From the IMG/VR virus record IMGVR_UViG_3300028840_002431, positions 352,540 through 416,539 of that record: a stretch of 64,000 nucleotides of DNA; one strand, 5' to 3'. Both the position numbers and the translations under genes were made by a program. Below, piece after piece: positions 26,449 to 52,270 of this stretch; the first letter of the stretch is position 1, and each line of letters opens with the position of its first letter. A model generated the notes under the pieces. It was not told where the DNA came from. It ran no database searches and saw only the letters and a program-made list of their open reading frames with translations.

Positions 26449-27036
26449 TTAGCTTCGCGGCTCGAACAACTTGTGGATCTCGTTGGCTCTCTCAGAAAGC
26501 GTCGAAAGGTCGGTCTCCACCCACGGGTGCGCGAGATCAACGTTCTGAGCAATCTCAGATACGCGAGACGCGATTTTGTGAAGGTCGGTCTTGGCCCGGT
26601 TCGAATCGAACTCCTTACCCTCTTTCAGCAAGTCCTCGATCCTGTCATTTGTGGCCGCCACCTTGGCGAGAATGTCTTCCGCCAACTCCACGTTAGAACT
26701 AAAAGTCTCGTAAGAAGCGGTCTTCTGCATAGCAATCTCCAAATCTGTGGGAAAACTACGATCTCCCTTTTTCATAAGAGAGTTAGTAGTAGATGAATAT
26801 CGAGCACGTTGGAAAGGCAGCAAAGCCCACATTTTATCGAGGTCAACCGAGAGCAAGACTTGGTTGTTCTCGTTAAACGCCTTCAACGCTGCCCTGGCCG
26901 TACGGTTGGTCACAAGCCCTGTAATGAGCTTGAGGACCGAGACCGGTCCCAACATGAAACGCTGACCGTTAGGCATCTGGACATAGTCCACGACCCCGTC
27001 GGTCCCAACTGTTACGAGTGCCAGCCGCTTAGCCAT
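26449..27036 (-). CDS. Hypothetical protein (195 aa) with internal KTAS motif
   Basis: Start moved to the ATG at 27036 (MAKRLALV) to avoid overlap with the upstream gene. Confidence 0.65.
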   Translation of the reverse strand: MAKRLALVTVGTDGVVDYVQMPNGQRFMLGPVSVLKLITGLVTNRTARAALKAFNENNQVLLSVDLDKMWALLPFQRARYSSTTNSLMKKGDRSFPTDLEIAMQKTASYETFSSNVELAEDILAKVAATNDRIEDLLKEGKEFDSNRAKTDLHKIASRVSEIAQNVDLAHPWVETDLSTLSERANEIHKLFEPRS

Positions 27037-27071
27037 CTCTCTAAGGATGGCTGATAGAAGAAATGTAACGG

Positions 27072-27860
27072 CTACAGATCTGACGGGTAATCGGCGTACT
27101 CGTCGGGGATGTCCTCTTCGGAAGCCCAACGGTCGCCAGACTTGAGGGTTTCGATAATCATACACCCCTGAGCCTTGGACAGTTCCTTCAACTGCACACG
27201 CTTTGGAATGTGATCGTAACCTGTTATGTCCATCAGCCCCAGGTCATGCCACCGGTTGTGATCGATCCCGGCGTCCTTCAACAGGAAAAATATGTAGCCG
27301 ACCTGCTTACTTGTAATCTCTCCCATCAGGCGCATACAACGGCGGTGACGGGATTTAGCTTCGGGAGTGGGATAGCCCTGGAGACCGGCCTCTTCGACCT
27401 CTTCTTCCCGCTCCTTACGCTCCTCCTGGGCCTCTTCTTGCTGCTCTTCTTGGCGCTCCATTTCCTTCTCAGGATCGCCACGTCGCTGGCGAGTCTCTGC
27501 CCAGTTCTCCCAGAACTCCTCGTTGTCGTCGAACTTTTCGGCCAGCTCCCCTACCCGCTTTTTAACATTGTCGCGCCAGTTCTGGGTCCGCTTGACGATG
27601 GGAGCTTTACCCTTTTCTAACGGCCCGTCGTCCTTCAAGCTGATGAGTTGAATTCTGATAGCATCAGCCCCACGACCGGCTCCCATACCGGAATGCGGTC
27701 GGATAGAAGTCCAAACACGGACGCCCACATGCTTTCCGAGTTTCAGGTCGTAATAAATCTCGCCACGGTTGGTACCGTCAGTGGGGCGTAGAGCACGGAA
27801 AGCCCTCTTCAAGAACTTTTCCATCTCCTCCTGAGTGATTTCTACGTATCGAGCGGCCAT
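27072..27860 (-). CDS. Hypothetical two-domain protein with acidic linker
   Basis: 262 aa. C-terminal TSKQVGYI...LSKAQGCMIIETLK resembles small helical nucleic-acid-binding modules of phage proteins (weak). Confidence 0.65.
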   Translation of the reverse strand: MAARYVEITQEEMEKFLKRAFRALRPTDGTNRGEIYYDLKLGKHVGVRVWTSIRPHSGMGAGRGADAIRIQLISLKDDGPLEKGKAPIVKRTQNWRDNVKKRVGELAEKFDDNEEFWENWAETRQRRGDPEKEMERQEEQQEEAQEERKEREEEVEEAGLQGYPTPEAKSRHRRCMRLMGEITSKQVGYIFFLLKDAGIDHNRWHDLGLMDITGYDHIPKRVQLKELSKAQGCMIIETLKSGDRWASEEDIPDEYADYPSDL

Positions 27861-27863
27861 GGC

Positions 27864-30800
27864 TTATTCCTCTTCCCAGTCGTCCGGTAGGACGCCTTCA
27901 TACTCAACGGCGGCCGTTCTTACTTCCGGTTCTTCTTCGATGACTTCTTCCCCGACTTCGACTTCTGCCTCCGTCTCAGGTTTCGGCACGTTCTGGCCTA
28001 CCGCGAGACCAGCCTCGCTCACAAAGGGGCTGATACCCGCTGCCTTACCCCCAACCACGTTCGGGCATATGACATTGAGATTCTCAGCGGCCCGGCTCAA
28101 CGCCACATACGCGAGCCGTCGTTCTGATTCTAACTCTTCTTGCTGAACCGCAGGATCGGGCGGCGGTTCCCCCGGCTTGGCGGGAGGAACAATCGGGAAC
28201 CGGCCCTTCGGCATCGCAACATAACAGTTCTTCCACTGCGCTCCTTTGACCGAGTGGACGGTGCCAAGGTAGACACCGGGCGGCGGCTTCCGCTCCTCCG
28301 GGGGTAGATTCTTCTGAGCGTCCTCCCACTTCTTGACATCCACCCTGAGTTCGTCGGCCTTAGCGGCATACCGGTCCATCTTGGCCTTGAAACCGAATGG
28401 CGTGCCTGGGTCCGTGATCATGTCCTCCGGGTCCGTCGGGTCCTTCTTGATCAACTCGAATAAGAAGCTGACGTTGCCGAGTCCTTCGGTCTCGCTTCCC
28501 TCTTCGTCATCACCCGCGTCGGCGGCTGCGTCTTCGTCGTCACCAATGGCGTCCCTGAGGTCCGCCTTGAGGCTCTCGCGGAACGTTTGCTCCACATACT
28601 CAGTACGGCCCGTGACAGAATCCGTGACCGTTGCAGTGCCACGCATACCAAGGATGTCCTCGAAGAGGTCGGTTGTTGTGTACTCAGGATCTTCGGAGCG
28701 GGCCTTCATCTGCCCCATCTCGCCTCGAAGCTCTTCGAGTTTCTCGATGGTCTTACGGAACTTGAAACCGGACTTGGAGCGAGCCAGCTTTCCAGCCAAG
28801 CTCCTCATGAACATGTCGTCTTCCATGGCCGCGATCGGGTTGACCGTTTTGACATCCAGTTCCATCCGCTTGGCGTAACCGTAAAGAGAGTCATTGACGG
28901 CCTGTTCGCATACCTCAGGAGCGACGAAGAACCGATTTGGCTTGTTAAGAACCTCTGCCAGGGCCTTCTGCATCTTCCCGAAGTCGCTCCCCATGACGAG
29001 GTCCACGTAACCCAGGAAAGCCTTTGTTTCAGGCGACCCCAGGAAACTCGAAGTGCCCTTACGGGCGTAAGGGACACCACGGATGATACAAGCCGTCTCG
29101 TAGGCGTGTTGCTCCTTGTTGGTCCGGGTTAGAATCGCGTTGTCCGTCACATTCCCGTCGGCCGTGATGTCGGACTTGATCTCTTCTACAACAGACAGGG
29201 CAGCGGTGGCCTCGTCAGGAGGGTTCCTAACCTCAATGGACGCCATCCCACGCGCCTTGTGTGGAGACGGCACAGCCTCCATGGGGATTTGCTTTTCGTT
29301 GTGCGCAATCAAAGCGTTCGCGGCCTCGACAATTTCCGGCTGGCACCGGTAGTTGGTGCGAATCATCTTGGTGGTCCAGCCCTCTGTCTCGCTTAGACTG
29401 GTGAAGAGGTCCGGACGCGCTCCACGGAAACCGTAGATGCTCTGCTTATCGTCCCCGCAAATCCATAATGATTTCCCATCTTTACCGTCACTGACGTGTT
29501 CAGTCATCTGGGAAATGACCGAGTACTGGACGCCGGACAGGTCCTGAGCCTCGTCCACGATAACGTGATCAAACGCCTGTTGCAGGGTCTTTCTGACGGC
29601 TGGCTCTCGTTTCAGGATGTTGTCGAAGATCACGAGCATGTCATCGAAGTCACCCAGGCGCTGATCGTTAGGACGCCATCGGCCCATGAATCTCTCGTAC
29701 GCCTTCGACTTACACGGGGCGGTCCAGCCAGGGATGGCCCCTTTCAAACCCTCGTACATCTCATACCAATCGGCGGCATCAACTTCTTCGGGAGTCCTGG
29801 CCTCCTCCTTGGCCTTGGCGGGAGTAATGTTGTTCCCGGCCCATTTGGCCTTGGCCAGAAGGACGTTCTTCAACCTGGGGACCTTACGCTCTTCGGGCGT
29901 ATCAGCCGGGTAACAGTCTGACCACATCCGCTGGACCGCTCTGGCGACAGGCGAGCCACCCTTGACGAATCCGCTCCGCCCTTTGGCCAAACCCATTGCC
30001 ATGCGCTCACGACCAGTCCCGTATTCCCCGATGAACTTCTTGAACAGCTTGTGCATTGTGCCGACCGACATCTGAGACACAGAGTCGCCGCCAATCGCGG
30101 TCCCGATCTTCTGTTCTAGCTCGTCGGCCGCCTTCTTGTTGAAGCTCGTCACGAGGATACGACTGGGGTCAACACGCCGATCCTTGACCAGGAACTCCGT
30201 CCGAGAGACGACCGTCGTGCTCTTGCCAGCACCGGCCCCGGCCGCCACGAGAACCCGGCCGTCGGTCAAGGCGGCCATCCTCTGTTCGTCATCCAGCTTA
30301 CGAAGAGGAGCGGGAACGTTGTTGGGGTTCGCAGGGTCGGTGGTTACAGCAACAGCGGCGGCTGTAGCGATTCCTACAACCTCCGACTTGGCGGGAGGTT
30401 CATCAACCTCACCCGACACCACCATGGCCCTCTCAGCGGCCTCCGTGGCTTTCTCCTGTACGTCGAGGAGACGGTCATCCTTCTCACTCACAGCCTGATT
30501 GTGTTCTTCTGAGTCCGGCGACGTGCCCTGTTGGTTCGTGCGGGCTGTCGCGATGGCTGCCACATCTTCGTCGGCTTCTTCCGAACCCACAGCCACGGCA
30601 TTCTGGAAAGAACCGGAACCAGCCGCCTCCGCCGCCATGTCGATCCACCTCCGAAGACGCATGTTCTTCAAAGGGATGACTGCAAACTTGTCGAGAGCGA
30701 CATCAGCGTCCTCGATGTCGGCGGCGGCCATTGCCGCTTTCATCTCCCGGATAGCCTTGTTGGACTTGAATATCTTTCTCAGGGTGGCCGGGCCGCCACG

Positions 30801-31163
30801 TTCGAGGGCGAACTGCATCTGCATTCTACGACGACCGAGACTCGTCGAGTTGCTGGGCAAGAACCGGAACGCCTTGTCCATCATTTTCTTCTGGCTCCCG
30901 GTCGGCATCGCGTCTCCCAGGAACTCTTTGATGGTCCCCACGTGAGCGCGATCAGCCATCTTAACAAGCTGGACGCCTTTCCGGACCAAGTCGTCGTCAA
31001 CCTTGGAACCCGTCGCTTCTTCGAGGTAACGCGAGTAGGTGTCTAACGCGAGTATGAACACAACATACTCAGCGATTTCGAGTTCGCCTATCTCGTCTTC
31101 TTCATCGTCATCGGGAGGCATCGCACCCGAGCGTTGAAGAACTTGCTCTGGAGAAAGTGTCAT
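27864..31163 (-). CDS. UvrD/PcrA/Rep-family superfamily 1 DNA helicase with ~290 aa N-terminal extension
   Basis: All SF1 motifs are present: AGAGAGKST, TSFNKKAADEL, DFDDML, VDEAQD, GDDKQSIYGFRGA, TNYRC, ILTRTN, TVHSVKG, ERRLAYVALSRA. Confidence 0.95.
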   Translation of the reverse strand: MTLSPEQVLQRSGAMPPDDDEEDEIGELEIAEYVVFILALDTYSRYLEEATGSKVDDDLVRKGVQLVKMADRAHVGTIKEFLGDAMPTGSQKKMMDKAFRFLPSNSTSLGRRRMQMQFALERGGPATLRKIFKSNKAIREMKAAMAAADIEDADVALDKFAVIPLKNMRLRRWIDMAAEAAGSGSFQNAVAVGSEEADEDVAAIATARTNQQGTSPDSEEHNQAVSEKDDRLLDVQEKATEAAERAMVVSGEVDEPPAKSEVVGIATAAAVAVTTDPANPNNVPAPLRKLDDEQRMAALTDGRVLVAAGAGAGKSTTVVSRTEFLVKDRRVDPSRILVTSFNKKAADELEQKIGTAIGGDSVSQMSVGTMHKLFKKFIGEYGTGRERMAMGLAKGRSGFVKGGSPVARAVQRMWSDCYPADTPEERKVPRLKNVLLAKAKWAGNNITPAKAKEEARTPEEVDAADWYEMYEGLKGAIPGWTAPCKSKAYERFMGRWRPNDQRLGDFDDMLVIFDNILKREPAVRKTLQQAFDHVIVDEAQDLSGVQYSVISQMTEHVSDGKDGKSLWICGDDKQSIYGFRGARPDLFTSLSETEGWTTKMIRTNYRCQPEIVEAANALIAHNEKQIPMEAVPSPHKARGMASIEVRNPPDEATAALSVVEEIKSDITADGNVTDNAILTRTNKEQHAYETACIIRGVPYARKGTSSFLGSPETKAFLGYVDLVMGSDFGKMQKALAEVLNKPNRFFVAPEVCEQAVNDSLYGYAKRMELDVKTVNPIAAMEDDMFMRSLAGKLARSKSGFKFRKTIEKLEELRGEMGQMKARSEDPEYTTTDLFEDILGMRGTATVTDSVTGRTEYVEQTFRESLKADLRDAIGDDEDAAADAGDDEEGSETEGLGNVSFLFELIKKDPTDPEDMITDPGTPFGFKAKMDRYAAKADELRVDVKKWEDAQKNLPPEERKPPPGVYLGTVHSVKGAQWKNCYVAMPKGRFPIVPPAKPGEPPPDPAVQQEELESERRLAYVALSRAAENLNVICPNVVGGKAAGISPFVSEAGLAVGQNVPKPETEAEVEVGEEVIEEEPEVRTAAVEYEGVLPDDWEEE

Positions 31164-31202
31164 ATCAAAACGCTCCTACTCGTCAATTAAACCAAAGAAT
31201 AC

Positions 31203-31853: not shown

Positions 31854-32723
31854 ATGGACTTAAATGTCCGAATTGAGAAGGGTTTGCCGACCGTTGTGCC
31901 GGATGCGATATCCTTCGAAACAGGCTTAACCAAAGAACAGTTAGAAGACCCGGAAGTGTTGGGGTATGAGCACCACGGGCCTGAATTCTCCGCCTACGAT
32001 AAAGGCGCGTTGCCGAGCTTCTACGAGGACCTCATCCTGGGAAGACCGATGCCCACGACCTTGGCCACTCCTGGGGTCCAGGACATCGACACCCTTCTTG
32101 CCATAGCCTTATTCTTACACCGGGATTTGGCGACCCACCCTTCTACCGCCCACGTTGTTTACACAGTGGACTTCATACACCGGCTTGGTCTACCAGCCCT
32201 GGCCCACCTGGACGACAACCTCGCACGCTTCTTTTCCTCCCTCCGAACCTATTTTCCGGAAGGACTCGGACAACGCGAACTCAGCGACCGGGTCCAACAC
32301 GGCGTCGGCTGGCTCAGAGAGTACATACACGACGGCACTTTAGCGCTCACCGCCCCGTCACGAGCCAGGGTCAGAATCCTGGACCAGGGCACATCAGGTT
32401 TCGTTGTCGCGACCGATGAGTCCGACACCCCTTTGTCGATCCACCTTGTTGACGGTTGGGTAGAACTCTACCGCCTTGGTTTCCTGAGGGGTGTCCTCTC
32501 CAAGAGCGGGCAAAACGACCGAAACTACGTTCTCGCCGCCCGTAAGAGCCTCTTCTTGCCCTTCGACCTGGAAAAGGCGTGCCACATCCTGAACCAGATG
32601 GAAAGCTCCATGGGAGAGCTACCCGACTGGAAGGTGTCAGAAGACGAATTATGGTTGTGGGGTCCGCCAGAAGGAACGTTGATCCTTCTTCGGCATATCA
32701 ACGACGTGCTCGTTAGAGTCTAA
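31854..32723 (+). CDS. Hypothetical protein, remote DHH-phosphoesterase-like candidate; only credible plus-strand gene
   Basis: 289 aa filling a gap free of minus-strand genes; EHHG and QDIDT motifs; its stop overlaps the convergent stop at 32720-32723. Confidence 0.6.
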   Translation: MDLNVRIEKGLPTVVPDAISFETGLTKEQLEDPEVLGYEHHGPEFSAYDKGALPSFYEDLILGRPMPTTLATPGVQDIDTLLAIALFLHRDLATHPSTAHVVYTVDFIHRLGLPALAHLDDNLARFFSSLRTYFPEGLGQRELSDRVQHGVGWLREYIHDGTLALTAPSRARVRILDQGTSGFVVATDESDTPLSIHLVDGWVELYRLGFLRGVLSKSGQNDRNYVLAARKSLFLPFDLEKACHILNQMESSMGELPDWKVSEDELWLWGPPEGTLILLRHINDVLVRV

Positions 32724-32971
32724 CCACCCCGCTTAACCCTAGCGTGGATATCTTTCAGGGCGTCCACAATCTCCGCTTGCTCTTTTTCAAGGTCCGCAAG
32801 ATTCTTCTTGGCCCTCTCCGCCCAATTCGAGGTTTCTCTGAGATCACGTTTGGCGTCGCCCAACGGCCCGGCGAGATTGATTACTCGCACGAAAGCTTCT
32901 TCCAAGTCGTCCTCAATAGAGGCACCCTTCTTTGTTCTAGCCTTGGCGGTCTTCCAGCGGAGATGGTCCAT
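32720..32971 (-). CDS. Small helical protein with MDxLRWK N-terminus
   Basis: MDHLRWKTAKART; GAGG RBS. Confidence 0.75.
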   Translation of the reverse strand: MDHLRWKTAKARTKKGASIEDDLEEAFVRVINLAGPLGDAKRDLRETSNWAERAKKNLADLEKEQAEIVDALKDIHARVKRGG

Positions 32972-32974
32972 GAT

Positions 32975-33256
32975 CTACCTCTTAGCGTCCATCCCGCCCC
33001 ACCAGTAAGCGAACTCCCAAAGACTGCTCGCAAGATTGGCGAAATGGCCTAAAGGAGGCCCTATGGGTGAACGTCCTTTCTTCGCAGCCCTCTCAGCTTG
33101 CTTGGCCGACGCCATCAATTCTGAAAAAGCCTGATCGAACTCGGCTTCCGCCTCCGGGTCGGCCGCCTTGAATCCGGCCTCGTAAGCCCTTTTCAACGTC
33201 TCTACAATAGGGCGATCCATACCCGCTTGTTTGGTTTTCCATTTGAGTTGGTCCAT
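32975..33256 (-). CDS. Small helical protein with MDxLKWK N-terminus
   Basis: Start moved to the ATG at 33256 (TGATG overlap): MDQLKWKTKQAG. Confidence 0.75.
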   Translation of the reverse strand: MDQLKWKTKQAGMDRPIVETLKRAYEAGFKAADPEAEAEFDQAFSELMASAKQAERAAKKGRSPIGPPLGHFANLASSLWEFAYWWGGMDAKR

Positions 33257-34002
33257 CAGATTTGCGCCCAATCATCAAAGCGGGTGTCCTTGAAACCGCC
33301 CTCAATTGAATTCATGTCTACCTGCATTTCCCACTCTTCACCTTCGTAGTCCTCGATGGTGAACACGATAGACTGTTGCTTCTGGCCTTTACCCCCGTAT
33401 TCGTCCCACTTCACATCTTCCACGTCCACCGGAGTGCCAAAAGTCTCCTCGTAATCCTCGTCGTCTCCTGTGAACTGGTTGGTCATTGTGACTGTGACTT
33501 CGACCCCATCCCCAATCGGGTAAGCATTAACGTCACTGATGTAATAGACGGAACCGGCGTGGCCCCCCTTTGGGACAAACTTGTGTTTCCGTAGCTTGCC
33601 GCTGGGCTTCCCTCTCTCATAATAACTCAACCACTTCTCGACTTCCCGGTTTCCGTACCAGTCGTCGTCTCTGGGAAGACCCTTGCGGGCCGCCGCCCTG
33701 ATATCGTCCTCAAGGAACTTGAACACATCCACGTAGAGTTGGACCCCGGAAGACATAACTACATCCCACACACCCATGGCCGCGTAACGAGGTGTGAACT
33801 CCCGGTCCTTGAGCCATTTCTCCACTAGATTCGCGGCTTTACGAGGGTCGAGTTTCCCAACGCTGTGGAGAAGATCCAAGGGAGAGTCCCCACCCATTGG
33901 GTCTTCCCCCCACCACCCGGCAGTCTTGCGCCGAGTGTAAGCTTTTTCAAAAGCCTTCCTCTCGACGACGTTCCTGTAACCCTCTACTACTTTTTCACGC
34001 AC
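33256..34002 (-). CDS. Hypothetical protein with KAFEKA..KTAG N-terminal tag
   Basis: 248 aa, coupled to its neighbours. Confidence 0.75.
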   Translation of the reverse strand: MREKVVEGYRNVVERKAFEKAYTRRKTAGWWGEDPMGGDSPLDLLHSVGKLDPRKAANLVEKWLKDREFTPRYAAMGVWDVVMSSGVQLYVDVFKFLEDDIRAAARKGLPRDDDWYGNREVEKWLSYYERGKPSGKLRKHKFVPKGGHAGSVYYISDVNAYPIGDGVEVTVTMTNQFTGDDEDYEETFGTPVDVEDVKWDEYGGKGQKQQSIVFTIEDYEGEEWEMQVDMNSIEGGFKDTRFDDWAQI

Positions 34003-34005
34003 GGT

Positions 34006-34338
34006 TTACTCCTCGTCTTCCGGAGGTGGTGTCCCCGGTTTGTGGCTCTTGTCGGTCGAGTAATGAGCCGGTCGCCACTTGATCTTATACTGACGAGCCA
34101 ACTTTTTAGCGGTCTTAACGGCCTCCTCGAAAGTCTTGGCCCACACAGTCCGAATCGAATCCCGCTCAATGACCTTGCCACCCCGAGATATCCCGACCTC
34201 TGTGCGCCATCCGTCAGACTCCGCCGCAATCACCTGAACCATCAGGGTGACTTTGTCAGAGCCGCCGACAAAATTATACTTCCACCGTTCCTTGTCAGCG
34301 GCCGTTTTCGTGTTCGTTTTCCAGCGAAGGTCGTCCAT
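34006..34338 (-). CDS. Small protein with MDxLRWK N-terminus
   Basis: MDDLRWKTNTKTAAD; GAGG RBS. Confidence 0.75.
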   Translation of the reverse strand: MDDLRWKTNTKTAADKERWKYNFVGGSDKVTLMVQVIAAESDGWRTEVGISRGGKVIERDSIRTVWAKTFEEAVKTAKKLARQYKIKWRPAHYSTDKSHKPGTPPPEDEE

Positions 34339-34339
34339 A

Positions 34340-34717
34340 TTACCTCGGAAAGATCTTGGCCCGCATTTGATCGGAGTACTCGCCAGGATCTCCGAACTTC
34401 TTGACGAACTTAGTCTCAGCCTTGGCGAGTTCGTCGAACGTCTTTTTGGAGATGTTCTCCAACTCCTTTACGGCGTCCTCTATCTTCTTGATCATGGCTT
34501 CGGCGTCTTTTCTAGCGGGGCCGTCTATAAAGTGAGCCGCGTCATAGTAGTCCCGCTTTGTCTCTGTGAGGTCGTACTCGATATCATGGAGAGTGTTCCA
34601 TACCTTATCGAGACAACGTCCCACGGGTCCGTCCCTAAGGAGGGCCTTACGGTTGAAAGCTGCGTCGAACGCGCTCTTCTCAAGAGCCTCCTTAAAAGCC
34701 TTCACCTCCTTGGACAT
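34340..34717 (-). CDS. Small helical protein with KAFKEALEKSA N-terminal tag
   Basis: 125 aa; AGGAGG RBS upstream. Confidence 0.75.
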   Translation of the reverse strand: MSKEVKAFKEALEKSAFDAAFNRKALLRDGPVGRCLDKVWNTLHDIEYDLTETKRDYYDAAHFIDGPARKDAEAMIKKIEDAVKELENISKKTFDELAKAETKFVKKFGDPGEYSDQMRAKIFPR

Positions 34718-34725
34718 AACACCTC

Positions 34726-35013
34726 CTACCGTCGCCGCTTCTTTACGTTTCTCTCCAGGATCTCGGCGGCTCTCCTGGCGTCCATCAAGGAGCGTGTTGC
34801 CTTGCTTATAGGCTCCAATACCGTGTCGGCCTCAAGCATACTCACCACTCCCTGATACTGGATGTTCGACACCATCTCTTCTAACTTCTTGACTGCCCGT
34901 GCGACCGCCATGAACTCCCGATCAACGGTCTTGAAGTCGGTGTCCTTCCAGCCCGCAGAACGCACGACTCCGTCAGACGCCGCGTTCCTTACCTTCCAAC
35001 GCAAAGCATCCAA
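34726..35013 (-). CDS. Small helical protein with MDxLRWK N-terminus
   Basis: TTG start with GGAGG RBS; MDALRWKVRNAAS. Confidence 0.7.
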   Translation of the reverse strand: MDALRWKVRNAASDGVVRSAGWKDTDFKTVDREFMAVARAVKKLEEMVSNIQYQGVVSMLEADTVLEPISKATRSLMDARRAAEILERNVKKRRR

Positions 35014-42267: not shown

Positions 42268-42801
42268 CTATCGACGGTAAGTGTAAGCAACTCGCCCACC
42301 TGCTCGTTGCTGAAGCAGGTATAAGAACTCCTCATGTTTATCAGCTACACCTTGAATCAGGTTATCTAACCCGTTTGTGAGCGTTCCCTTGGCGTCAAGG
42401 CTCTCCCTGGCAGCGTTGAGACACCCAACAACACACTTTTCCGTCGCCAAACTCACGGCCACCATCTCGTCGGCACTCGGCCGATCTTCGGGCGACCACG
42501 CATTGACGAAGACACTCATCACCTCCATCTGAGTAACTGGACACACCAAATCCGGGTGTCCTAAGCCCATGGCCTTCTCAGCCATCTGGTCGATGAAAAG
42601 CTGAGAATCCTCGTACAGACGCTCGAAAAGTATATGGTCCCCGTAATACGAGGGACCAGCCGTCCGCCAATGGTGGCTCTGGTGCATCGCATTGGCCGCC
42701 CTTAGAATCGCTGTAAGCGCTCCCAACTCCGCCATCGGAAGTCCGGCGAAGCTTTGACACGCCTGAGCGAAATAAGGACTGGCCTCATTCGCTACACGCA
42801 T
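42268..42801 (-). CDS. Dps/ferritin-like protein
   Basis: HHW..GPSYYGDHILFERLYE....IDQMAEK matches the Dps ferroxidase-centre pattern; C-terminal DKHEEFLYLL. Confidence 0.75.
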   Translation of the reverse strand: MRVANEASPYFAQACQSFAGLPMAELGALTAILRAANAMHQSHHWRTAGPSYYGDHILFERLYEDSQLFIDQMAEKAMGLGHPDLVCPVTQMEVMSVFVNAWSPEDRPSADEMVAVSLATEKCVVGCLNAARESLDAKGTLTNGLDNLIQGVADKHEEFLYLLQQRAGGRVAYTYRR

Positions 42802-42807: not shown

Positions 42808-43092
42808 CTACTTCCAGTTCTTTTCGCCAGCTTCTTTGCCGCCTTCGCCGCCTTCGTCACCGCCCTTGAGATCCTGGACCATGGCCGAAAACTGAGTCCG
42901 AACCGGAGCGCCCTTAAGAGACTTTCCAGTCCACGGGGACTTGCACGGCATTACCTTCTCATCAAGGTAGAACGTTTTCGAGCCGTCAGTGTACTTCCAC
43001 ATGACGGGAGCCGCCGCCGTCTTTGTCTCAACAGCGGTGCGCTCCGCAATCTCGTTGGCCTGACTCAGTACGCTTGCTTGTCTCGGATGCAT
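42808..43092 (-). CDS. Small hypothetical protein with RQAS/KTAA motifs
   Basis: 94 aa; fills the gap between neighbours. Confidence 0.65.
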   Translation of the reverse strand: MHPRQASVLSQANEIAERTAVETKTAAAPVMWKYTDGSKTFYLDEKVMPCKSPWTGKSLKGAPVRTQFSAMVQDLKGGDEGGEGGKEAGEKNWK

Positions 43093-46001: not shown

Positions 46002-46018
46002 GTGGGTACCTACACCAA

Positions 46019-47482
46019 TCAGGTAACAGCCTTCACGAATTCAGACAGGGCCTTACGGTACTTACCAGGGGCGCTGCGTTTGAGAGCCTTGAAGAACTCG
46101 TGGGGTTTCAGCATGTCTATCGCTCTGTAGCCACCCAAAGCGTCCGCTTTCTCCTGCCAGTCCCGGTCACGGTAGTCTGGAAACGGAATCGTGCCGGTAA
46201 ACAATTTGACGGCCGACCGAAGCTCCAACGGCGCTGGTAATGCTTCGCCGTCCCTTTTTCGTTCCTTAAGTTGATCCCGATGTTCCTTCTGGGCTTGCTT
46301 CCAGTGCCACTCGAACGAATCAATCGAGTCCGCGAGCCTAGTGTAAAACTCGATGTCGTCCAGGGCGTGAAAGTCCAACTGCCTAACTGAGAGGCCCTGG
46401 TCCTTTAGCCGTTGGCGTAACTTGATAACCTCCGGGTCATCCTTTCTGTACGAAGGGTGTCCGGGGTCGTACTGTTGTCGAAACTCTGGGGTCTGAATCT
46501 TACGAGAAGGGAAACCAGGGCGACGACCCCGCATTTCCGGCAGCATCAATGTACTCCGGTCCACAGCATAGGCCATATAACTCTGAGCAAAATGCTGTAG
46601 CTCGTGCCGCAACGACTTGCCAAGACCCTCTAACCCTTCCCATCGGAGGGTGTCGGGGATAATAATCGTCAGAAGCCTCTGAGGATCGTACCAAAAAGCC
46701 TTGACCCCTTTTGTCGCCTTGGTTGTCAGCTTTACCTTTATCCCCTGCCAACCGAGCTTCGTCCTCTCGATGGACTTCTTGAGGTCTTCTAACAACTGCT
46801 TACGCATCTCCGCGACCTCAGGCTTGGCCGACTCGTCTTTTTCTCCCAGGAACTTAACGGTCCCCTTCAACTCTTCTACGTGCTCGTCTATTTGCTTCTG
46901 GAGTTTCTTTTCCAGATCCTTCGTATCGTATCGCCAGCCCTTGAGATTGATGGGAAACTCCCTCACGGCCTCGTCGCCTTTGAGTGTAACGCCGGGCTGA
47001 ATCCTCTTCTTGATACTGGCTATTTCACGTTGAATGTCGGCTATGTCCTGTCTCTTACTCTCGTAGTGACCGTCCACACGACCCTTGTAGTACTCATACC
47101 TATTGTCGGCTCGCTCTTGAAGATCCTTTTGCTTCTCAGGGGTCATCTTCTGAAACAACCGGATGCTGTCACGTTCCCCAGGATGCCCAAAGACCCACGA
47201 AACGTCGTAGAACGCTTTGTAGTTCTTCCACGTCGGGTTGGTCTTGTACTCTTTGGCGACATCCAAAAGCTGTGACAGCCTCTTATCGTAGTCCGTTTTT
47301 TCCTTCCGACCCTTCAACAAGGACTGTGCTTTCTTAAGTTCATGGTCGGAAACGACGGCTACAACCCAGTCGTAAATCTCTTCGTACATGGCGGGCGGCG
47401 CTTCGAATATCCCGGCGACTCGTAAGGCCGCTTCCCTACGACGGTCGTAGCTGTAGAACGTCGTACGATCGTAGGTGTACAT
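46019..47482 (-). CDS. Hypothetical protein with HExxH zinc-metallopeptidase-like motif
   Basis: LRHELQHFAQSY plus a downstream DDIEF; N-terminal REAALRVAG tag. Confidence 0.55.
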   Translation of the reverse strand: MYTYDRTTFYSYDRRREAALRVAGIFEAPPAMYEEIYDWVVAVVSDHELKKAQSLLKGRKEKTDYDKRLSQLLDVAKEYKTNPTWKNYKAFYDVSWVFGHPGERDSIRLFQKMTPEKQKDLQERADNRYEYYKGRVDGHYESKRQDIADIQREIASIKKRIQPGVTLKGDEAVREFPINLKGWRYDTKDLEKKLQKQIDEHVEELKGTVKFLGEKDESAKPEVAEMRKQLLEDLKKSIERTKLGWQGIKVKLTTKATKGVKAFWYDPQRLLTIIIPDTLRWEGLEGLGKSLRHELQHFAQSYMAYAVDRSTLMLPEMRGRRPGFPSRKIQTPEFRQQYDPGHPSYRKDDPEVIKLRQRLKDQGLSVRQLDFHALDDIEFYTRLADSIDSFEWHWKQAQKEHRDQLKERKRDGEALPAPLELRSAVKLFTGTIPFPDYRDRDWQEKADALGGYRAIDMLKPHEFFKALKRSAPGKYRKALSEFVKAVT

Positions 47483-48402: not shown

Positions 48403-48404
48403 AC

Positions 48405-48800
48405 TTACTCATTGTAGTACAACGCCTGGGCAAGCAAGCTCATCAGGCTGTTTATCTGGCTCACCTTGCCTTCAAAGCGCTTGAACTCTCTGTTGAACGC
48501 GCCGTCACGCATCTTTTTGATGTGCTTCAAAACGTCTCTCGCCCACCGTTCCGAGATGCCGCCCAGAGCCTTTTCGATCTTATCGAGCGCCGTCTTGGTG
48601 GCCGGTTTGATCCTGGGGTACTTGCCCACCAAATCCGCAAGGCGTTTCACCTTGGAGTCTTTTAGGTCTGGTTCAGCGTCCACGATAGCATCGAACCAGT
48701 CGTCAGTGGAGGCGTCCCACGCCGCTGTCCGAACAGCCGCCTCAAAAGCTACACGTGGGTCGGCTTGAAGCGCCTTTTCAAATGCTTTACGCGGGTTCAT
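48405..48800 (-). CDS. Small helical protein with tandem PRKAFEKAL/PRVAFEAAVRTAA tags
   Basis: 131 aa; ATGA overlap with the upstream gene. Confidence 0.75.
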   Translation of the reverse strand: MNPRKAFEKALQADPRVAFEAAVRTAAWDASTDDWFDAIVDAEPDLKDSKVKRLADLVGKYPRIKPATKTALDKIEKALGGISERWARDVLKHIKKMRDGAFNREFKRFEGKVSQINSLMSLLAQALYYNE

Positions 48801-50707
48801 CTCGCGGCCTTTCTGAGGGCTTCTTCAAAATCCATGCGGGCTGTCTTTTTCTTCTTGGGCTTCTCTGGCCCGCGCCATTTGGTGGTACCCTCGATCCTGT
48901 CCTTGAGAGAAGCGCAGAAGGCTCCCGTGTCCGACACTTTGCCTTCCATCTTCTTCATACACTTCTTGACATCACCGCCGATGGACTTCCAGAACTTCTT
49001 GCGGCTTTCGTCCGTCCAGCCTTCCGGCATGGTCTCCCACTTGGCCGCGACCTTGTCCTTGTCCTGGCCAAACAGTTCCGACGCGGCGACCTTCTCCATC
49101 TCTAGCTCGACCATCTTCTCGGCGCACGGAAGACAGATGTCGGCCACCTCTTCCGCTGTCAGATAGAAGTCGGGTTCCTGAGCTTCCAGAGCCTCTTCAA
49201 ACGCTACTCTCGGGTTGCTCATGGACGCCTCCTTGGCTAGATAGTTGGAGGGGACCGCCTTCTTGACCGCTTTGGCTACGGTCTGCCCCGCACGGCTGCC
49301 GACATCACTGATGTGGACCTTGCCGCCTTTCCAATACGCTATCTTGTCGCCGCCCATCCAATTGCCATCCAGGCGTTCTCCGTCAGTGGAAAGCTTCTTA
49401 CTCTCCATTGACTTATGCTCATAAAAAGCGTCTATCACCTTCTTATCCTTGGGGCCTAAACGCAAATCAGCTTGCTTCTCCGTGGCTGCAACATGCAAAG
49501 CCGCCTCGAATTCAAACACCGGGTCAACAGAAGCCGTCTTGTCCATGTGTGTGATAACTCCCGTCATGAAGGCCAGATGGGTGTAAGCCTCGTACAGAGC
49601 CTCCATCCGCCGTTCGTAAGAATACCCGGCGAGCGGGGATTCCTGGTCCACCTTGTCGTCCCGGAGTTCCTTGAAGGCTTTTTCGGCCCTGTCGTAGGAC
49701 TCCTGGAGAGCCTTGATCTGGTTCTGGTCGCCACGGGACTTGGAACTCTTCCCCTTGTCGATAACACCATCGGCCAGCTTCATACCGGCCTTGGCTTCAT
49801 CTAACAACCGGTCCTTGGCCTTCTCGATATTGGCTATGGCCTTCTTCTTTCCTTCGTCCCGGTCCCCACGGTACTTGTAGTCGCTGGTCCGGCTCCACGC
49901 CTTTAACGCCCGCTCGAATTGTTTGAAGAACTTGTCAGCGTTCTTCTTACTCCGCTCCGCCTTCCGACGGACCTTCATGTCTCCTAACACAGAGGGAGCG
50001 TCAGGTTGTTGCGGATCGGTCAAGTCTTGCCACACAACATTGTACGCACGCCACACATATAGAAGTTTTCGCATGGCGAACCGGTGTGGATCGGCCGCCT
50101 CATCCGTCTTGGCATCCATGTAGGCGCGGGCCGCCTTGTGCTGGGCCTTCTGGACATTGATGTAACCCTTCTTGATGTCCTCCTGGTCCAGCTTACCCGA
50201 CTTCAAGCCGTCTTCGAGCTTCTTCTGTAGGGCCTTGATCTTCGGGTGGTCGTAGGACTCGTTCTTATCGAGGTCCGCCGCTGGCATGTCATCGATGGCC
50301 CTCTTGGCTTCGTTGGGAAGCCCTCGCAACCACTTGGAGGGGAGCTTCATACCGTCAGGCATCTTCTGAGGGTAGTACTTGTGGTTCTTCTCAGTCCGAT
50401 ACGCCTCTGACCTTTGGTGTGCCGGTTCGTCCTTGATCTCGTCGGAGGCAACCCTGGCCTCCAACACCGTCTGGAACTCGACTGCCGCCAGCTTCGAAAT
50501 CATTCTCTTCTTGCTCTGAATGGTGGCTTCCAGACCCTGTTCGATTGTCTTAGCGTTTTCGAGAGTCAGGTTTTCGACGGCCTTACCCGCTTTCAGGTCG
50601 GCCATGTCTTTGCGGAGCTTTTTCAGATCCTGTTCGTCTCTCTTGAGGGCCTCTTGCCACTCCTTCTTGGTCGTCTCGTAGGCAGCCTTCTCCATACTTA
50701 GCTCCAA
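48797..50707 (-). CDS. Lys/Glu-rich modular protein (putative internal head polyprotein)
   Basis: 636 aa (TTG at 50707 or ATG at 50695); modules separated by RVAS, KTAS, KEAS, KVAA and AFEEAL linkers. Confidence 0.75.
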   Translation of the reverse strand: MELSMEKAAYETTKKEWQEALKRDEQDLKKLRKDMADLKAGKAVENLTLENAKTIEQGLEATIQSKKRMISKLAAVEFQTVLEARVASDEIKDEPAHQRSEAYRTEKNHKYYPQKMPDGMKLPSKWLRGLPNEAKRAIDDMPAADLDKNESYDHPKIKALQKKLEDGLKSGKLDQEDIKKGYINVQKAQHKAARAYMDAKTDEAADPHRFAMRKLLYVWRAYNVVWQDLTDPQQPDAPSVLGDMKVRRKAERSKKNADKFFKQFERALKAWSRTSDYKYRGDRDEGKKKAIANIEKAKDRLLDEAKAGMKLADGVIDKGKSSKSRGDQNQIKALQESYDRAEKAFKELRDDKVDQESPLAGYSYERRMEALYEAYTHLAFMTGVITHMDKTASVDPVFEFEAALHVAATEKQADLRLGPKDKKVIDAFYEHKSMESKKLSTDGERLDGNWMGGDKIAYWKGGKVHISDVGSRAGQTVAKAVKKAVPSNYLAKEASMSNPRVAFEEALEAQEPDFYLTAEEVADICLPCAEKMVELEMEKVAASELFGQDKDKVAAKWETMPEGWTDESRKKFWKSIGGDVKKCMKKMEGKVSDTGAFCASLKDRIEGTTKWRGPEKPKKKKTARMDFEEALRKAAR

Positions 50708-51448
50708 TCAGTTCCACCCTATTTTACAGTACCGTGTCAGGGTGTCTCCCGGCACGGGAGACGAAATGGCGTCCACCACCTGGAAGTAACAAAGCTCCTC
50801 CACTACAGGATCACTATAACTTCTTTGCCAACGCCATCGAACAGCCCACAACCCCGGCTGACCGCACTCTCCCGCCGTCCCTGTCACGTAATAACACCCC
50901 GGCTTAGACTTGACAGGTTGACGATTGGCGGGGCCTATTCGCTTCAAGGCACACCCGGTCTGCATCTGGTACATGGAGTAACAAATCCAGACTGGATCAA
51001 CGCCTCCCGGAACTTGGTACAAAATGTCCCCCATCGTGAACGTGTGGCCCCAACGAAATACCAACGAAACCGTGGGCGTCGCACAAAGAGGCGGCGGGAC
51101 ATGAACCACGTCCAAATAACCAGTGACGACACCGACGCCGACAATCGGTCGCGGCTGCGATAAGGCGACTCGGGCAGAACCTTGGATGAAACCTTTGATC
51201 CCCATCCAGGCCATCACGTCGCCAGCGACGTTACTACCACCGACCGTGGAACCAGCTAGGTCCTTCAAACTACCGTCGATCAGTTCTCCCGAACCGACCA
51301 CGTAGCCAGACACGTTGAACGTGCTGACCGTGTCCCCGGTTACACTCGAAGAGCCTGTGATGGGATCAACGATATCGAGAGTCAGCGAAGGCGACCCGTC
51401 TACTGTCGCCGCACCTGTCGCCGTTCCGTCGATATCATAAAGAGGCAT
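50708..51448 (-). CDS. Structural protein: N-terminal G/S/T-rich beta repeats plus Cys-rich Ig-like domain
   Basis: 246 aa; the C-terminal domain aligns by eye with the adaptor N-terminus. Confidence 0.6.
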   Translation of the reverse strand: MPLYDIDGTATGAATVDGSPSLTLDIVDPITGSSSVTGDTVSTFNVSGYVVGSGELIDGSLKDLAGSTVGGSNVAGDVMAWMGIKGFIQGSARVALSQPRPIVGVGVVTGYLDVVHVPPPLCATPTVSLVFRWGHTFTMGDILYQVPGGVDPVWICYSMYQMQTGCALKRIGPANRQPVKSKPGCYYVTGTAGECGQPGLWAVRWRWQRSYSDPVVEELCYFQVVDAISSPVPGDTLTRYCKIGWN

Positions 51449-51463
51449 CCCATCTCTAACTTA

Positions 51464-51847
51464 TCAAGTTTCTTGGACGAGAAGCTGACCCGACGGAAAA
51501 CGCACCTGATCCGATACCAGGACCGTCCGTGGAGTGCTCAGGTTCCCGAAGTACAACATGTTGCCGCCAGAGGCTGCGTCCAGGAGCGCAAACGCCACGA
51601 TTGTCCCCCAGGTCGCTGTGGCCACCGGGAAGGTAATGTCCGTGGTGTTAGAAGTCTGACCGTTGACGGGGGCCGCGAATGTTGCAATCTGACGGCCATA
51701 ACCCCCGCCTGAAACTTCTGTGCCACCGCCTCCAACATTAGGGGCGACTGTGTAAAGAGCGACATAAACCGTTGTCGGGGACGTGTAGGGGGTAGCCCGT
51801 AACGCAGCGTTTATGAAGTTGTCGTCAAGATAATATGTCTTAGGCAT
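51464..51847 (-). CDS. Phage minor structural / fibre-anchor protein (paralog of 53714-54115)
   Basis: VYVALYT..P..GGGTEVSGGGYGRQ...NTTDITFPVATATWGTIVAFALLDAASGGNMLYFGNL motif, a pattern common in phage structural modules. Confidence 0.65.
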   Translation of the reverse strand: MPKTYYLDDNFINAALRATPYTSPTTVYVALYTVAPNVGGGGTEVSGGGYGRQIATFAAPVNGQTSNTTDITFPVATATWGTIVAFALLDAASGGNMLYFGNLSTPRTVLVSDQVRFPSGQLLVQET

Positions 51848-51886
51848 GATCCCTCTATTACGAGAACTGATTAAAGCTTCCGGAAC

Positions 51887-52270
51887 CTACATCCAAAACT
51901 TTCTCTCCGTTAGCTCCAGTCCTTTGTCCTTAGCCTTCGTCTTCAACGACACAACTTCCGCTGGCACAAACCTTCCGGACCAGAAATACCCTACCCGCAC
52001 CACGCCCTGGTACTTCGTGGAGTTGACATCAATCTGCCCTGGCCGCGCCTCTACCCCTCGCATCACGGAGTTAGCACCCTCTCGAACAGCGGCTACAGCG
52101 TCGTCTATCCGACGCTTCGAGGTGCTGGGATCGGCTCCAGCCCACGCGATTTGAATATTGGTACAGAAGAAGGCCCCCTCTTTTCCGGCGTACATTATCA
52201 CGTCCGGGTATGTTTCCCCGTGCGTGGCCGCTTCTTTCAGCGCTTCTTCGAATGCCTTACGAGGGTCCAT
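51887..52270 (-). CDS. Hypothetical protein with PRKAFEEALKEAA tag (127 aa)
   Basis: Start moved to the ATG at 52270 (GAGG RBS) to avoid overlap with the upstream gene. Confidence 0.7.
   Translation of the reverse strand: MDPRKAFEEALKEAATHGETYPDVIMYAGKEGAFFCTNIQIAWAGADPSTSKRRIDDAVAAVREGANSVMRGVEARPGQIDVNSTKYQGVVRVGYFWSGRFVPAEVVSLKTKAKDKGLELTERKFWM

What the first reader, a model, noticed from the sequence alone, without database searches (positions are those of the whole stretch)
26449..52270. Recurrent [KR]-x-A-[AS] and AFEEAL peptide tags on unrelated proteins: candidate capsid-targeting / maturation-protease signal
Seen: PRKAFEKAL and PRVAFEAAVRTAA (48405), PRVAFEEAL, FEFEAALHVAA and DFEEALRKAAR (48797), PRKAFEEALKEAA (52270), KAFKEALEKSA (34340), KAFEKAY..RKTAG (33256), REAALRVAG (46019), RQAS and KTAA (42808), MRVA (42268), KTAS (26449), RWAS (27072) and RTAA (near the helicase C-terminus). 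The protein bodies share nothing else, and the motifs cluster near termini; they do not stand out at the termini of the tail/baseplate proteins. Established: T4 internal proteins carry a short N-terminal capsid-targeting sequence removed by gp21, and phiKZ gp175 cleaves many head proteins at a short consensus. Inference: this is an analogous but different code, marking cargo that is loaded into the prohead and cleaved near K/R-x-A.
Basis: partly seen in the sequence, partly recalled or inferred. Interest (0 to 1): 0.76.

Follow-up and report, generated by a model that had tools for sequence, protein, structure and literature searches.

The report
N-terminal address tags in huge phages
A family of roughly 400-kb phages puts one of at least four short, interchangeable peptides on the very start of about a tenth of its proteins, probably to load them into the capsid and then cut them free, which would be a new protein-sorting code if experiments confirm it.

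Summary
The window is the end of a 416.5-kb uncultivated phage genome. M-x(0-2)-N-P-R-K-A-F-E-x-A-L-x-K-x-A-A sits at the exact N-terminus of about 12 otherwise unrelated small proteins here, about 17 in a 398-kb relative and about 6 in a 412-kb relative (expected about 0.1 each). Codons vary synonymously, so selection acts on the peptide.

It is one of four N-terminal tags; the others are YSYDRR, MDxLRWK and RVAARF. Orthologues and paralogues swap tags on the same body.

[KR]-x-A-[S/A/G] follows 27-54% of tags against 7% of untagged N-termini. It is also 4-10 times over-represented in the scaffold protein next to the prohead protease. On its own the tetrapeptide is common, and proteome-wide it is no better conserved than control tetrapeptides.

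An AlphaFold model of one carrier shows the tag as a loose extension ending at the junction.

A T4-like capsid-targeting tag plus a maturation-protease site is the best reading (about 0.4), but nothing shows encapsidation or cleavage. Tail and baseplate proteins carry no tags.

The parts
52226..52270 (-). Tag A (MDPRKAFEEALKEAA) at the N-terminus of the 127-aa protein (gene 51887-52270).
   Evidence: HMM score 23.1. The G001 orthologue carries MAANPRKAFEETLKKQA.
48717..48800 (-). Two tandem tag A copies followed by the RTAA junction (MNPRKAFEKALQADPRVAFEAAVRTAAW) on the 131-aa protein (gene 48405-48800).
49178..49222 (-). Tag A (MSNPRVAFEEALEAQ) inside the 636-aa ORF 48797-50707. It is preceded by AAGGAGG plus ATG, so it is probably the start of a nested 141-aa product.
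   Evidence: This module is 76% identical to part of the G001 1014-aa ORF.
49484..49546 (-). Degenerate internal tag A with a preceding KTAS (MDKTAS-V-DPVFEFEAALHVAA) in the 636-aa ORF.
   Evidence: Not scored by the HMM. Coordinates were derived by hand.
48800..48838 (-). C-terminal tag remnant RMDFEEALRKAAR of the 636-aa ORF. Its stop codon overlaps the ATG of the next tagged gene.
   Evidence: HMM score 7.0. In G001 the two reading frames are fused here.
34655..34717 (-). Degenerate tag A (MSKEVKAFKEALEKSAFDAAF) on the 125-aa protein (gene 34340-34717).
   Evidence: The G001 orthologue begins MSNPRKAFESAIKRKA.
33910..34002 (-). Degenerate tag A plus the RRKTAG junction (…VERKAFEKAYTRRKTAGWW) on the 248-aa protein (gene 33256-34002).
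   Evidence: The G001 orthologue begins MNPRKAFENAINNPRSAFEEALGKTGAF. It ranks second of 486 proteins for [KR].A[SAG].
47411..47482 (-). Double tag B plus junction (MYTYDRTTFYSYDRRREAALRVAG) on the 487-aa HExxH protein (gene 46019-47482).
   Evidence: In the AlphaFold model residues 1-22 have pLDDT below 50 and the body scores about 91.
32918..32971 (-). Tag C (MDHLRWKTAKARTKKGAS) on the 83-aa protein (gene 32720-32971).
33221..33256 (-). Tag C (MDQLKWKTKQAG) on the small protein in ORF 32975-33271.
34294..34338 (-). Tag C plus the KTAA junction (MDDLRWKTNTKTAAD) on the 110-aa protein (gene 34006-34338).
34972..35013 (-). Tag C (LDALRWKVRNAASD, TTG start) on the 95-aa protein (gene 34726-35013).
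43006..43092 (-). Conserved N-terminus MHPRQAS… followed by KTAA on the 94-aa protein (gene 42808-43092). Possibly a diverged tag.
   Evidence: MHPRQAS is identical in G000, G001 and G005. KTAA is present in G000 only.
31119..31163 (-). Tag-D-like N-terminus of the UvrD-like helicase (MTLSPEQVLQRSGAM; gene 27864-31163).
   Evidence: The orthologues read MIMTISAKRVVEAAVG (G001) and MATISERVIERSRQAA (G005).
27909..27920 (-). RTAA in the acidic C-terminal tail of the helicase.
   Evidence: V-[RK]-T-A-[A/F] is retained in G001 and G005 although the flanks differ. Coordinates were derived by hand.
27120..27131 (-). RWAS in the C-terminal tail of the 262-aa protein (gene 27072-27860).
   Evidence: [KR]-x-A-S-E-E is retained in G001 (twice) and in G005 within diverged flanks. 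Coordinates were derived by hand.

Best explanation
**Shown.**
- These are portable N-terminal address peptides.
- About 10% of the proteins of this clade of roughly 400-kb phages begin with one of at least four short motifs:
  - A: NPRKAFEEAL-x-K-x-AA
  - B: YSYDRR
  - C: MDxLRWK
  - D: RVAARF
- Each motif lies at a fixed distance from the initiator Met.
- The motifs sit on bodies that share nothing else, and they can be exchanged on the same body.
- The tag is often followed by [KR]-x-A-[S/A/G]. The same tetrapeptide is packed into the scaffold protein encoded beside the prohead protease.

**Inferred mechanism.**
- The tag is an N-capped amphipathic helix on a flexible leader.
- It docks the protein onto a component of the assembling prohead (scaffold, inner shell surface or protease), so that the protein is enclosed.
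- The prohead serine protease then cuts at or near [KR]-x-A-small. This frees the cargo from its tag while it also dismantles the scaffold.
- The cargo is mostly small, fast-evolving ORFans, plus HExxH and SprT-like metallo-enzymes and a UvrD-like helicase. It would be ejected with the DNA as host-takeover or anti-defence proteins.
- This matches the logic of the T4 capsid-targeting sequence with gp21, but the sequences differ and there are several tag classes.
For: **The tag is real and acts as a peptide.**
- Counts far exceed shuffles in three genomes, and the HMM shows a clear gap to noise.
- Synonymous codon variation shows peptide-level selection.
- Each tag keeps a fixed spacing from the Met.

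**The bodies are unrelated.** All-against-all BLAST finds no similarity between carriers of the same tag, and the N-terminal clusters were built after removing body homologues.

**Tags are swapped on the same body.**
- The HExxH family carries B, D, or A/D and B/D hybrids before the same AG-[ILV][FL]EAPPAM body, across 36 relatives.
- The PPEFLEQQKK protein carries D in G000 and C in G001.
- Single peptides combine A and D in L078 and L097.

**The tag is a loose extension.** Residues 1-22 have pLDDT below 50, and a confident body begins at the junction (mean pLDDT 91.1).

**The junction is enriched after tags**.

**A head protease and scaffold are present.**
- Protease: phrog_18299, E = 2.5e-9, located between the portal and the MCP. 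His132 and Ser183 are invariant in 20 relatives.
- Homologues are annotated as head maturation protease in Tunturi_5 and phage G.

**The scaffold carries the motif.**
- It is the most [KR].A[SAG]-enriched protein of 486 (p = 8e-7).
- In 34 relatives there are 227 sites against 51 expected. A [KR]-x-A-S about 50 aa from the C-terminus is kept even where the flanks have changed.
- The Tunturi_5 scaffold-like gp332 has 9 against 2.3 expected.

**Carriers look like accessory cargo.**
- They lie in the head-to-tail structural block and in hypervariable tRNA-rich regions.
- They are less conserved than other genes: 11/32 against 242/454 have a G001 homologue.
- Tail and baseplate proteins lack tags.

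**Precedents.** T4 CTS, the P1 DarB N-terminal 30 residues, and SPN3US gp245 cutting after A-x-E (PMC9024508; PMC10052503). Tag A holds an invariant A-F-E.
Against: - There is no virion proteome, N-terminome or expression data for any member.
- The MCP, portal and protease carry no tag. The MCP's KTAA is not conserved in distant relatives.
- Proteome-wide, the tetrapeptide is no better conserved than control tetrapeptides. It shows no N-terminal enrichment in G005.
- In the HExxH family the conserved junction is really small-Gly (AG or GG), and the K/R is poorly kept.
- Most 'internal' tags are internal translation starts, so they give no evidence for polyprotein cleavage.
- Many carriers lie in regions that look early or accessory and are not near head genes.
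- The protease has no Pfam or PDB relative, and its model was poor, so its specificity cannot be inferred.
- Ten percent of the proteome is a large cargo list.
- My gene calls and tag patterns are hand-made.
Confidence: 0.4

Rival explanations
1. The tags are docking helices for a shared hub that is not the prohead interior. Candidates are an external virion platform (head or tail fibres, as with the conserved N-terminal anchors of tailspikes), the phage actin-like Volactin filament, or an intracellular phage compartment. In this reading [KR]-x-A-small is only a helix-ending linker.
For: - The tags are amphipathic, N-terminal, exchangeable and detached from the body.
- The window's tagged genes are interleaved with Gp80 fibre-like genes, a sheath-like gene and a Volactin gene.
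- Tandem tag copies would raise avidity.
- Many carriers are far from the head genes.
Against: - Most bodies are 80-160-aa ORFans that do not resemble fibres or receptor-binding proteins.
- The main replication and transcription enzymes are untagged, which argues against a general compartment-import signal.
- This reading does not explain why the junction tetrapeptide is concentrated in the scaffold.
Confidence: 0.2
2. The tags are N-terminal degrons or adaptor-binding peptides for the phage's own Clp-type machinery. They would time the removal or unfolding of accessory proteins.
For: - The genome encodes a protein I read as ClpX-like (AAA+ matches; Cys-rich N-terminus). A tag-D gene lies next to it.
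- It also encodes a tmRNA with an …LAIAA tag.
- In the relative phage G, ClpX and ClpP were detected in particles (PMC12484599).
- Degrons need a free terminus, which fits the fixed spacing from the Met.
Against: - By my recollection, known ClpX N-terminal signals are short and degenerate, not four sharply conserved 7-14-residue motifs.
- This reading does not explain the scaffold enrichment.
- ClpP was not looked for here.
Confidence: 0.1
3. There is no common function. In this reading the motifs are remnants of shared ancestry or of recombination at gene starts in a gene-shuffling genome, and [KR]-x-A-[AS] reflects Lys/Ala-rich helical N-termini.
For: - The tetrapeptide is frequent and is not specially conserved proteome-wide.
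- The genomes hold many small paralogous families.
- Some K-E-A-S strings are simply translated Shine-Dalgarno sites.
Against: - Synonymous codon turnover with invariant N, P, R, A, F and E excludes a DNA-level recombination signal.
- Tags persist across genomes of 44-55% GC.
- In the HExxH family the tag is kept down to about 30% identity.
- Tag exchange on one body and the fixed spacing from the Met indicate selection on the tag itself.
Confidence: 0.1

Closest known systems
T4 capsid targeting sequence (CTS) of internal proteins IPI-III and Alt, removed by prohead protease gp21 (Mullaney & Black 1996, as cited in PMC9024508 and PMC10052503)
   Same: - A roughly 10-residue peptide at the extreme N-terminus.
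- It is shared by otherwise unrelated, fast-evolving proteins.
- A protease site lies at its C-terminal edge.
- The scaffold is cut at many copies of the same site.
   Different: - There is no sequence similarity to the T4 CTS.
- No PF03420 (gp21-type) protease is present.
- There are at least four tag classes instead of one.
- The candidate site is [KR]-x-A-small rather than L/I-x-E.
- Far more carriers exist (about 30-45 per genome).
- Function is untested.
Head propeptides of phiKZ-like phages, for example SPN3US gp245 cutting after A-X-E (PMC10052503)
   Same: - A giant phage in which many head and ejection proteins are processed at a short consensus.
- Tag A contains an invariant A-F-E.
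   Different: - Those propeptides are mostly 111-254 residues long and are not a shared tag.
- Tags B to D have no A-x-E.
- The protease families are not detectably related.
P1 DarB N-terminal packaging signal (PMC9024508)
   Same: - The N-terminal 30 residues are sufficient for capsid loading of an anti-restriction protein.
- A UvrD-like helicase is among the carriers here.
   Different: The P1 signal is not described as a motif shared by many proteins, and no shared sequence is seen.
Encapsulin cargo-loading peptides (recalled from memory; not tested here)
   Same: Short terminal peptides on unrelated cargo bind the interior of an HK97-fold shell.
   Different: They are usually C-terminal, are not removed, and belong to a non-viral compartment.
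L27-like N-terminal extension of Staphylococcus phage 80alpha capsid and scaffold proteins, cut by host Prp (recalled from memory; not tested here)
   Same: A conserved N-terminal peptide on phage head proteins, removed at a fixed site.
   Different: That peptide mimics a host ribosomal protein and is cut by a host cysteine protease. It sits on the capsid and scaffold proteins themselves, not on accessory cargo.

Membership tests
T4-type capsid targeting sequence system | Short peptide at the extreme N-terminus shared by proteins with unrelated bodies | tested here: met
T4-type capsid targeting sequence system | Peptide directs the protein into the prohead | not testable with these tools
   No virion proteome exists for any tag-bearing phage. 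Phage G and Tunturi_5 lack tag D, the only tag searched in them.
T4-type capsid targeting sequence system | Prohead protease removes the peptide at a site on its C-terminal edge, and the same site recurs in the scaffold | tested here: inconclusive
   - The junction is enriched after tags.
- The scaffold is the top-enriched protein, with conserved sites.
- The tetrapeptide is not specially conserved proteome-wide.
- No cleavage data exist.
T4-type capsid targeting sequence system | gp21-type (Peptidase_S77, PF03420) protease | tested here: not met
   No match in the whole 416.5-kb genome at E <= 1.
phiKZ/SPN3US head propeptide processing | Cleavage after (S/A/G)-x-E | tested here: inconclusive
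   Tag A has an invariant A-F-E (24 of 24 A and F, 23 of 24 E). Tags B to D have none. Enrichment of A-x-E in head proteins was not computed.
HK97-fold head with separate scaffold and serine maturation protease | HK97-type major capsid protein | tested here: met
   phrog_2522 at E = 2e-49. PF05065 gives only a weak match, below its cut-off. The protein is 40% identical to the phage G major head protein.
HK97-fold head with separate scaffold and serine maturation protease | Prohead protease with a His/Ser catalytic pair, encoded between the portal and the scaffold/MCP | tested here: inconclusive
   - phrog_18299 at E = 2.5e-9.
- H132 and S183 are invariant in 20 relatives.
- There is no Pfam or PDB match, and the model has pLDDT below 50 over the catalytic part.
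ClpX N-terminal degrons | Recognition and unfolding by ClpX | not tested
   AAA+ matches and a Cys-rich N-terminus led me to read one gene as ClpX-like; this was not tested against a ClpX family.
Double-glycine leader peptides (C39 peptidase) | Leader ending in GG, GA or AG and removed by a C39 peptidase | not tested
   The junction in the HExxH family is AG or GG before [ILV]. No C39 peptidase was searched for, and the bodies are large folded proteins.

The most novel reading that the evidence does not exclude
A clade of roughly 400-kb phages uses a multi-address peptide code. At least four interchangeable N-terminal tags, sharing one protease-site junction, would decide which of about 30-45 accessory proteins per genome are loaded into the capsid. 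The different tags might specify different layers or a loading order. No phage is known to use several tag classes on this scale.
Probability: 0.3. Interest if true: 0.85.

Novelty: new variant of a known kind. Interest (0 to 1): 0.7.

Why it matters
**If true**
- It would give a readable rule for predicting the injected proteome of uncultivated huge phages from sequence alone.
- It would point to dozens of candidate host-takeover and anti-defence proteins.
- It would supply several short tags for loading foreign proteins into large capsids.

**If the destination is not the capsid**
- A set of exchangeable N-terminal peptides on a tenth of a viral proteome would still be a protein-sorting system that has not been described.

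**Practical consequence**
- Many start codons in these genomes can be fixed by the tags. Several database gene calls of the HExxH family begin 25-40 residues too late.

Tried and rejected
**Hypotheses rejected or weakened**
- DNA- or RNA-level signal: rejected. Codons vary and upstream DNA is not conserved.
- Polyprotein cleavage at internal tags: weakened. Most internal tags follow an in-frame Shine-Dalgarno plus ATG, and 'K-E-A/T-S' is simply AAG GAG translated.
- MCP KTAA as a conserved cleavage site: rejected. It reads KTPQ in distant relatives.
- Motif-wide purifying selection on [KR].A[SAG]: not found.

**Searches that led nowhere**
- T4 gp21-type protease: none found.
- Classifying the prohead protease by structure or profile: the model was poor and there were no Pfam or PDB hits.
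- Finding tag carriers in the 5.8-billion-protein set by N-terminal words: only the query itself came back.
- PHROGs and Pfam on tagged proteins: almost all unknown. The exceptions are SprT-like, DUF5662 and UvrD-like hits.
- ESM Atlas on the 127-aa carrier: only a sub-threshold nuclease-like lead.
- Fold search of the HExxH protein: no significant match.
- A late-promoter test for expression timing: only a leaderless-type promoter-like motif was found, and it does not precede the tagged genes.
- Tag D in phage G and Tunturi_5: absent.

**Not done**
Full report
**Context**

- The window is bases 352,540-416,539 of a single 416,539-bp IMG/VR virus record, called G000 here (GC 0.55; CheckV completeness 87%).
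- Nearly all window genes lie on the minus strand.
- In genome coordinates the head genes are:
  - large terminase, 25124-27166
  - portal, 21041-22834
  - head maturation protease, 15688-17163
  - an acidic, Gln-rich scaffold-like protein, 14437-15642
  - HK97-type major capsid protein (MCP), 12804-13682
- Comparison with a complete relative shows that the two contig ends adjoin. The window therefore continues the head block into fibre-like (Gp80), sheath-like, tube-like and baseplate genes.
- By MCP identity the relatives are an uncultured 485-kb phage (84%), Tunturiibacter phage Tunturi_5 (48%) and Bacillus phage G (40%).

**The AFEEAL peptide is real**

- Genome-wide the motif resolves into M-x(0-2)-[N/D]-P-R-[K/V]-A-F-E-x-[A/S]-[L/V/I]-x-K-x-A-A. 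It sits at the exact N-terminus of small proteins of 83-158 aa whose bodies show no mutual BLAST similarity.
- Scanning IMG/VR for its back-translation found almost only this phage and two complete relatives:
  - G001: 398,071 bp, terminal repeats, GC 0.48
  - G005: 411,618 bp, terminal repeats, GC 0.44
- I fetched both relatives whole.
- The pattern [NDK]PR.A[FY]E occurs 10, 15 and 5 times in G000, G001 and G005. Residue-shuffled ORFs give 0.1, 0.0 and 0.05.
- A 14-column HMM gives about 35 hits at 9-28 bits, then a gap to noise.
- P, R, A and F are invariant in 24 seed instances.
- Their codons differ freely (CCA/C/G/T, AGA/CGT/AGG/CGA, and so on) and the upstream DNA is unrelated. Selection is therefore on the peptide.
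- The degenerate copies at 34340 and 33256 are genuine, because their G001 orthologues begin with canonical tags.

**It is one of several tags**

I clustered the first 45 residues of all gene calls of the three genomes after removing pairs with homologous bodies. This revealed further N-terminal motifs:

| Tag | Motif | Met position before the tag | Examples in the window |
|---|---|---|---|
| A | NPRKAFEEAL-x-K-x-AA | 1-3 residues | 48405, 51887 |
| B | [YF]-[ST]-Y-D-[RH]-R | 1-2 residues | present twice on the 487-aa protein at 46019-47482 |
| C | M-D-x-[LN]-[RK]-W-K | 1 residue | four genes at 32720-35013, alternating with degenerate tag-A genes |
| D | R-V-[VA]-A-R-[FY] | 5-8 residues | helicase N-terminus (weak) |

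- Counts against shuffles (G000/G001/G005):
  - B: 15/10/1 against about 0.15
  - C: 10/7/2 against about 2.4
  - D: 18/18/12 against 2-3.6
- Counting only instances with a nearby upstream Met gives the clearest contrast for C and D (5-14 against 0.2-0.45).
- Tag D is also the usual N-terminus in more distant relatives.

**Tags are exchangeable modules**

- The 487-aa protein belongs to a family with invariant H293, E294, H297 and E378.
- In 36 members the body starts at [ILV]-[FL]-[EQ]-A-P-P-A-M and is preceded by a small-Gly junction. The leader before that varies:
  - tag D in most members
  - tag B in the window copy and in two others
  - hybrids such as ANPRKVASRW and TEFQDAV…RRVVGRF
- A Lys/Glu-rich protein with the body PPEFLEQQKK carries tag D in G000 and tag C in its G001 orthologue.
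- L078 and L097 carry A and D in one peptide.
- An AlphaFold model of the window's HExxH protein, built on a 36-sequence alignment, is confident (mean pLDDT 91.1, pTM 0.83). The exception is residues 1-22, the two B tags, at pLDDT below 50. The ordered fold begins just after R-V-A-G.
- The fold has no significant match in the PDB or BFVD.

**The [KR]-x-A-[AS] element**

- Alone it is common, at about 2-3 per 1000 positions. It is enriched 2-3 fold in residues 1-20.
- [KR]-T-A-[AGS] is enriched 5-fold in the first 30 residues of G000, but not in G005.
- It starts within about 23 residues of the tag in 9/29 (A), 10/21 (B), 7/13 (C) and 9/33 (D, excluding the tag's own RVAA). The rate is 7.2% for untagged N-termini and 4.6% for an internal window.
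- The scaffold-like protein is the most enriched of all 486 proteins: 9 sites against 0.95 expected from its own composition, p = 8e-7.
  - Second is the tagged 248-aa window protein.
  - Tail and baseplate proteins show 19 against 17.4.
- Thirty-four non-identical scaffolds from relatives, found through the protease, hold 227 sites against 51 expected.
  - A [KR]-x-A-S about 50 residues from the C-terminus persists while its surroundings change: RTASTRTVG, RKASKGVKSVG, KTASKKGAKSLK, RQASVKTLGN.
  - It lies just before the conserved C-terminal L-W-x-S-A-P-D-V domain.
- Tunturi_5 gp332, in the scaffold position, has 9 against 2.3.
- Caveats:
  - Across all orthologue pairs the tetrapeptide is retained no better than permuted controls (42% against about 37%, p = 0.24).
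  - The MCP's KTAA is KTPQ in distant relatives.
  - In the HExxH family the K/R is poorly conserved.
The first two lie in diverged acidic tails.
- MRVA at 42268 has no support.

**Internal tags**

- In G001 the tag occurs inside ORFs of 1014 and 330 aa, and in G000 inside the 636-aa ORF.
- In six of the eight internal copies examined the tag follows an in-frame AAGGAG-type Shine-Dalgarno and an ATG. These are probably nested or fused starts, and the recurring K-E-A/T-S-M is the ribosome-binding site read as protein.
- Only two copies lack a Met. This removes what looked like evidence for polyprotein processing.

**Who carries tags**

- Carriers are shorter than other proteins (median 133 aa against 171 aa).
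- They less often have a G001 homologue (11/32 against 242/454).
- They concentrate in two kinds of place:
  - a hypervariable stretch at 64-150 kb, part of which (about 64-94 kb) holds about 42 tRNA genes and a tmRNA
  - slots inside the structural block; the slot upstream of a conserved 306-aa gene holds different tagged genes in each genome
- Few bodies can be named. The exceptions are the HExxH family, an SprT-like protein, DUF5662 and the UvrD-like helicase.
- No tag occurs in tail or baseplate ORFs, or in the MCP, portal or protease.

**Interpretation**

- The sequence shows a system of portable N-terminal peptides with a shared junction, and a scaffold studded with the same junction motif next to a prohead protease.
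- Precedents are the T4 CTS with gp21, the P1 DarB signal, and the many processed head and ejection proteins of SPN3US, which are cut after A-X-E. Tag A contains an invariant A-F-E.
- Encapsidation and cleavage remain inferences.
- Membership in the T4 family fails on protease type and on sequence.
- The protease could not be classified beyond a PHROG match and an invariant His/Ser pair.
- Rival readings cannot be excluded: docking to another hub, Clp degrons (the genome encodes a ClpX-like protein and a tmRNA), or no common function.
- I put the capsid-cargo reading at about 0.4.

**Limits**

- Gene calls are my own crude caller.
- Tag patterns were derived from the same genomes in which they were then counted.
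- The relatives are not independent samples.
- No complex prediction or proteomic data were available.

Noticed in passing
window 41135-42220 (-): A strong match to Pfam Volactin (PF25216, E = 1e-71), an actin-like family that I recall as archaeal. It is encoded inside the phage structural block and is 85% identical in G001.
   Followed up: partly
window 31838, 46017 and 61032; 125 sites genome-wide: The motif [CT]GGTGTA[AG] lies with its first base 16-20 nt before the ATG of many genes (the 7-mer CGGTGTA stands in 30 upstream regions against 2.3 expected). No Shine-Dalgarno lies between them. This suggests a -10-like promoter giving leaderless mRNAs. It is rare in the structural block and does not precede tagged genes.
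   Followed up: partly
G000 genome 12804-13682 (locus L026): The major capsid protein is 99.3% identical to G001 and 95.5% identical to G005, although most genes are about 70% identical. It stays at 76-98% in relatives whose proteases are only 37-70% identical.
   Followed up: partly
L029-L030 (G000 genome about 64-94 kb): About 42 tRNA genes and a tmRNA with tag peptide ANDNAAPLAIAA, interspersed with small tagged ORFs. The genome also encodes a protein I read as ClpX-like.
   Followed up: no
window 46019-47482 (-); paralogues at G000 212271-215259: The 487-aa family has invariant HExxH plus a downstream Glu. Its AlphaFold model is confident (pLDDT 91), yet it has no significant structural match in the PDB or BFVD. 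This may be a new metallo-enzyme fold. Forty-three metagenomic homologues exist, all unannotated.
   Followed up: partly
window 48797-50707 (-), internal start at 49222: A strong in-frame Shine-Dalgarno (AAGGAGG) plus ATG lies inside the 636-aa ORF. This suggests a nested 141-aa product sharing the C-terminus, as seen in some phage head-assembly genes.
   Followed up: partly
G005 390923-394204 (loci L071-L072): The G005 orthologue of the helicase ends in …STYDRRAL. This is a tag-B-like string at a C-terminus, in a genome that otherwise lacks tag B.
   Followed up: no
window 51464-51847 and 53714-54115 (-): Two paralogues match Pfam Gp80 (podophage GP4 fibre I protein; E = 3e-42 and 5e-34). They flank the tagged genes.
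   Followed up: no
window 42268-42801 (-): A Dps/ferritin-like DNA-binding protein (phrog_3636, E = 1e-9). I found no counterpart among my G001 or G005 gene calls.
   Followed up: no
window 35030-39319 (-): A 1429-aa protein, 86% identical to its G001 counterpart. Its N-terminus looks sheath-like (…PPGVYTRT…) and it gives weak DUF2460 and DUF4815 matches. It lies directly upstream of the block of alternating tag C and tag A genes.
   Followed up: no
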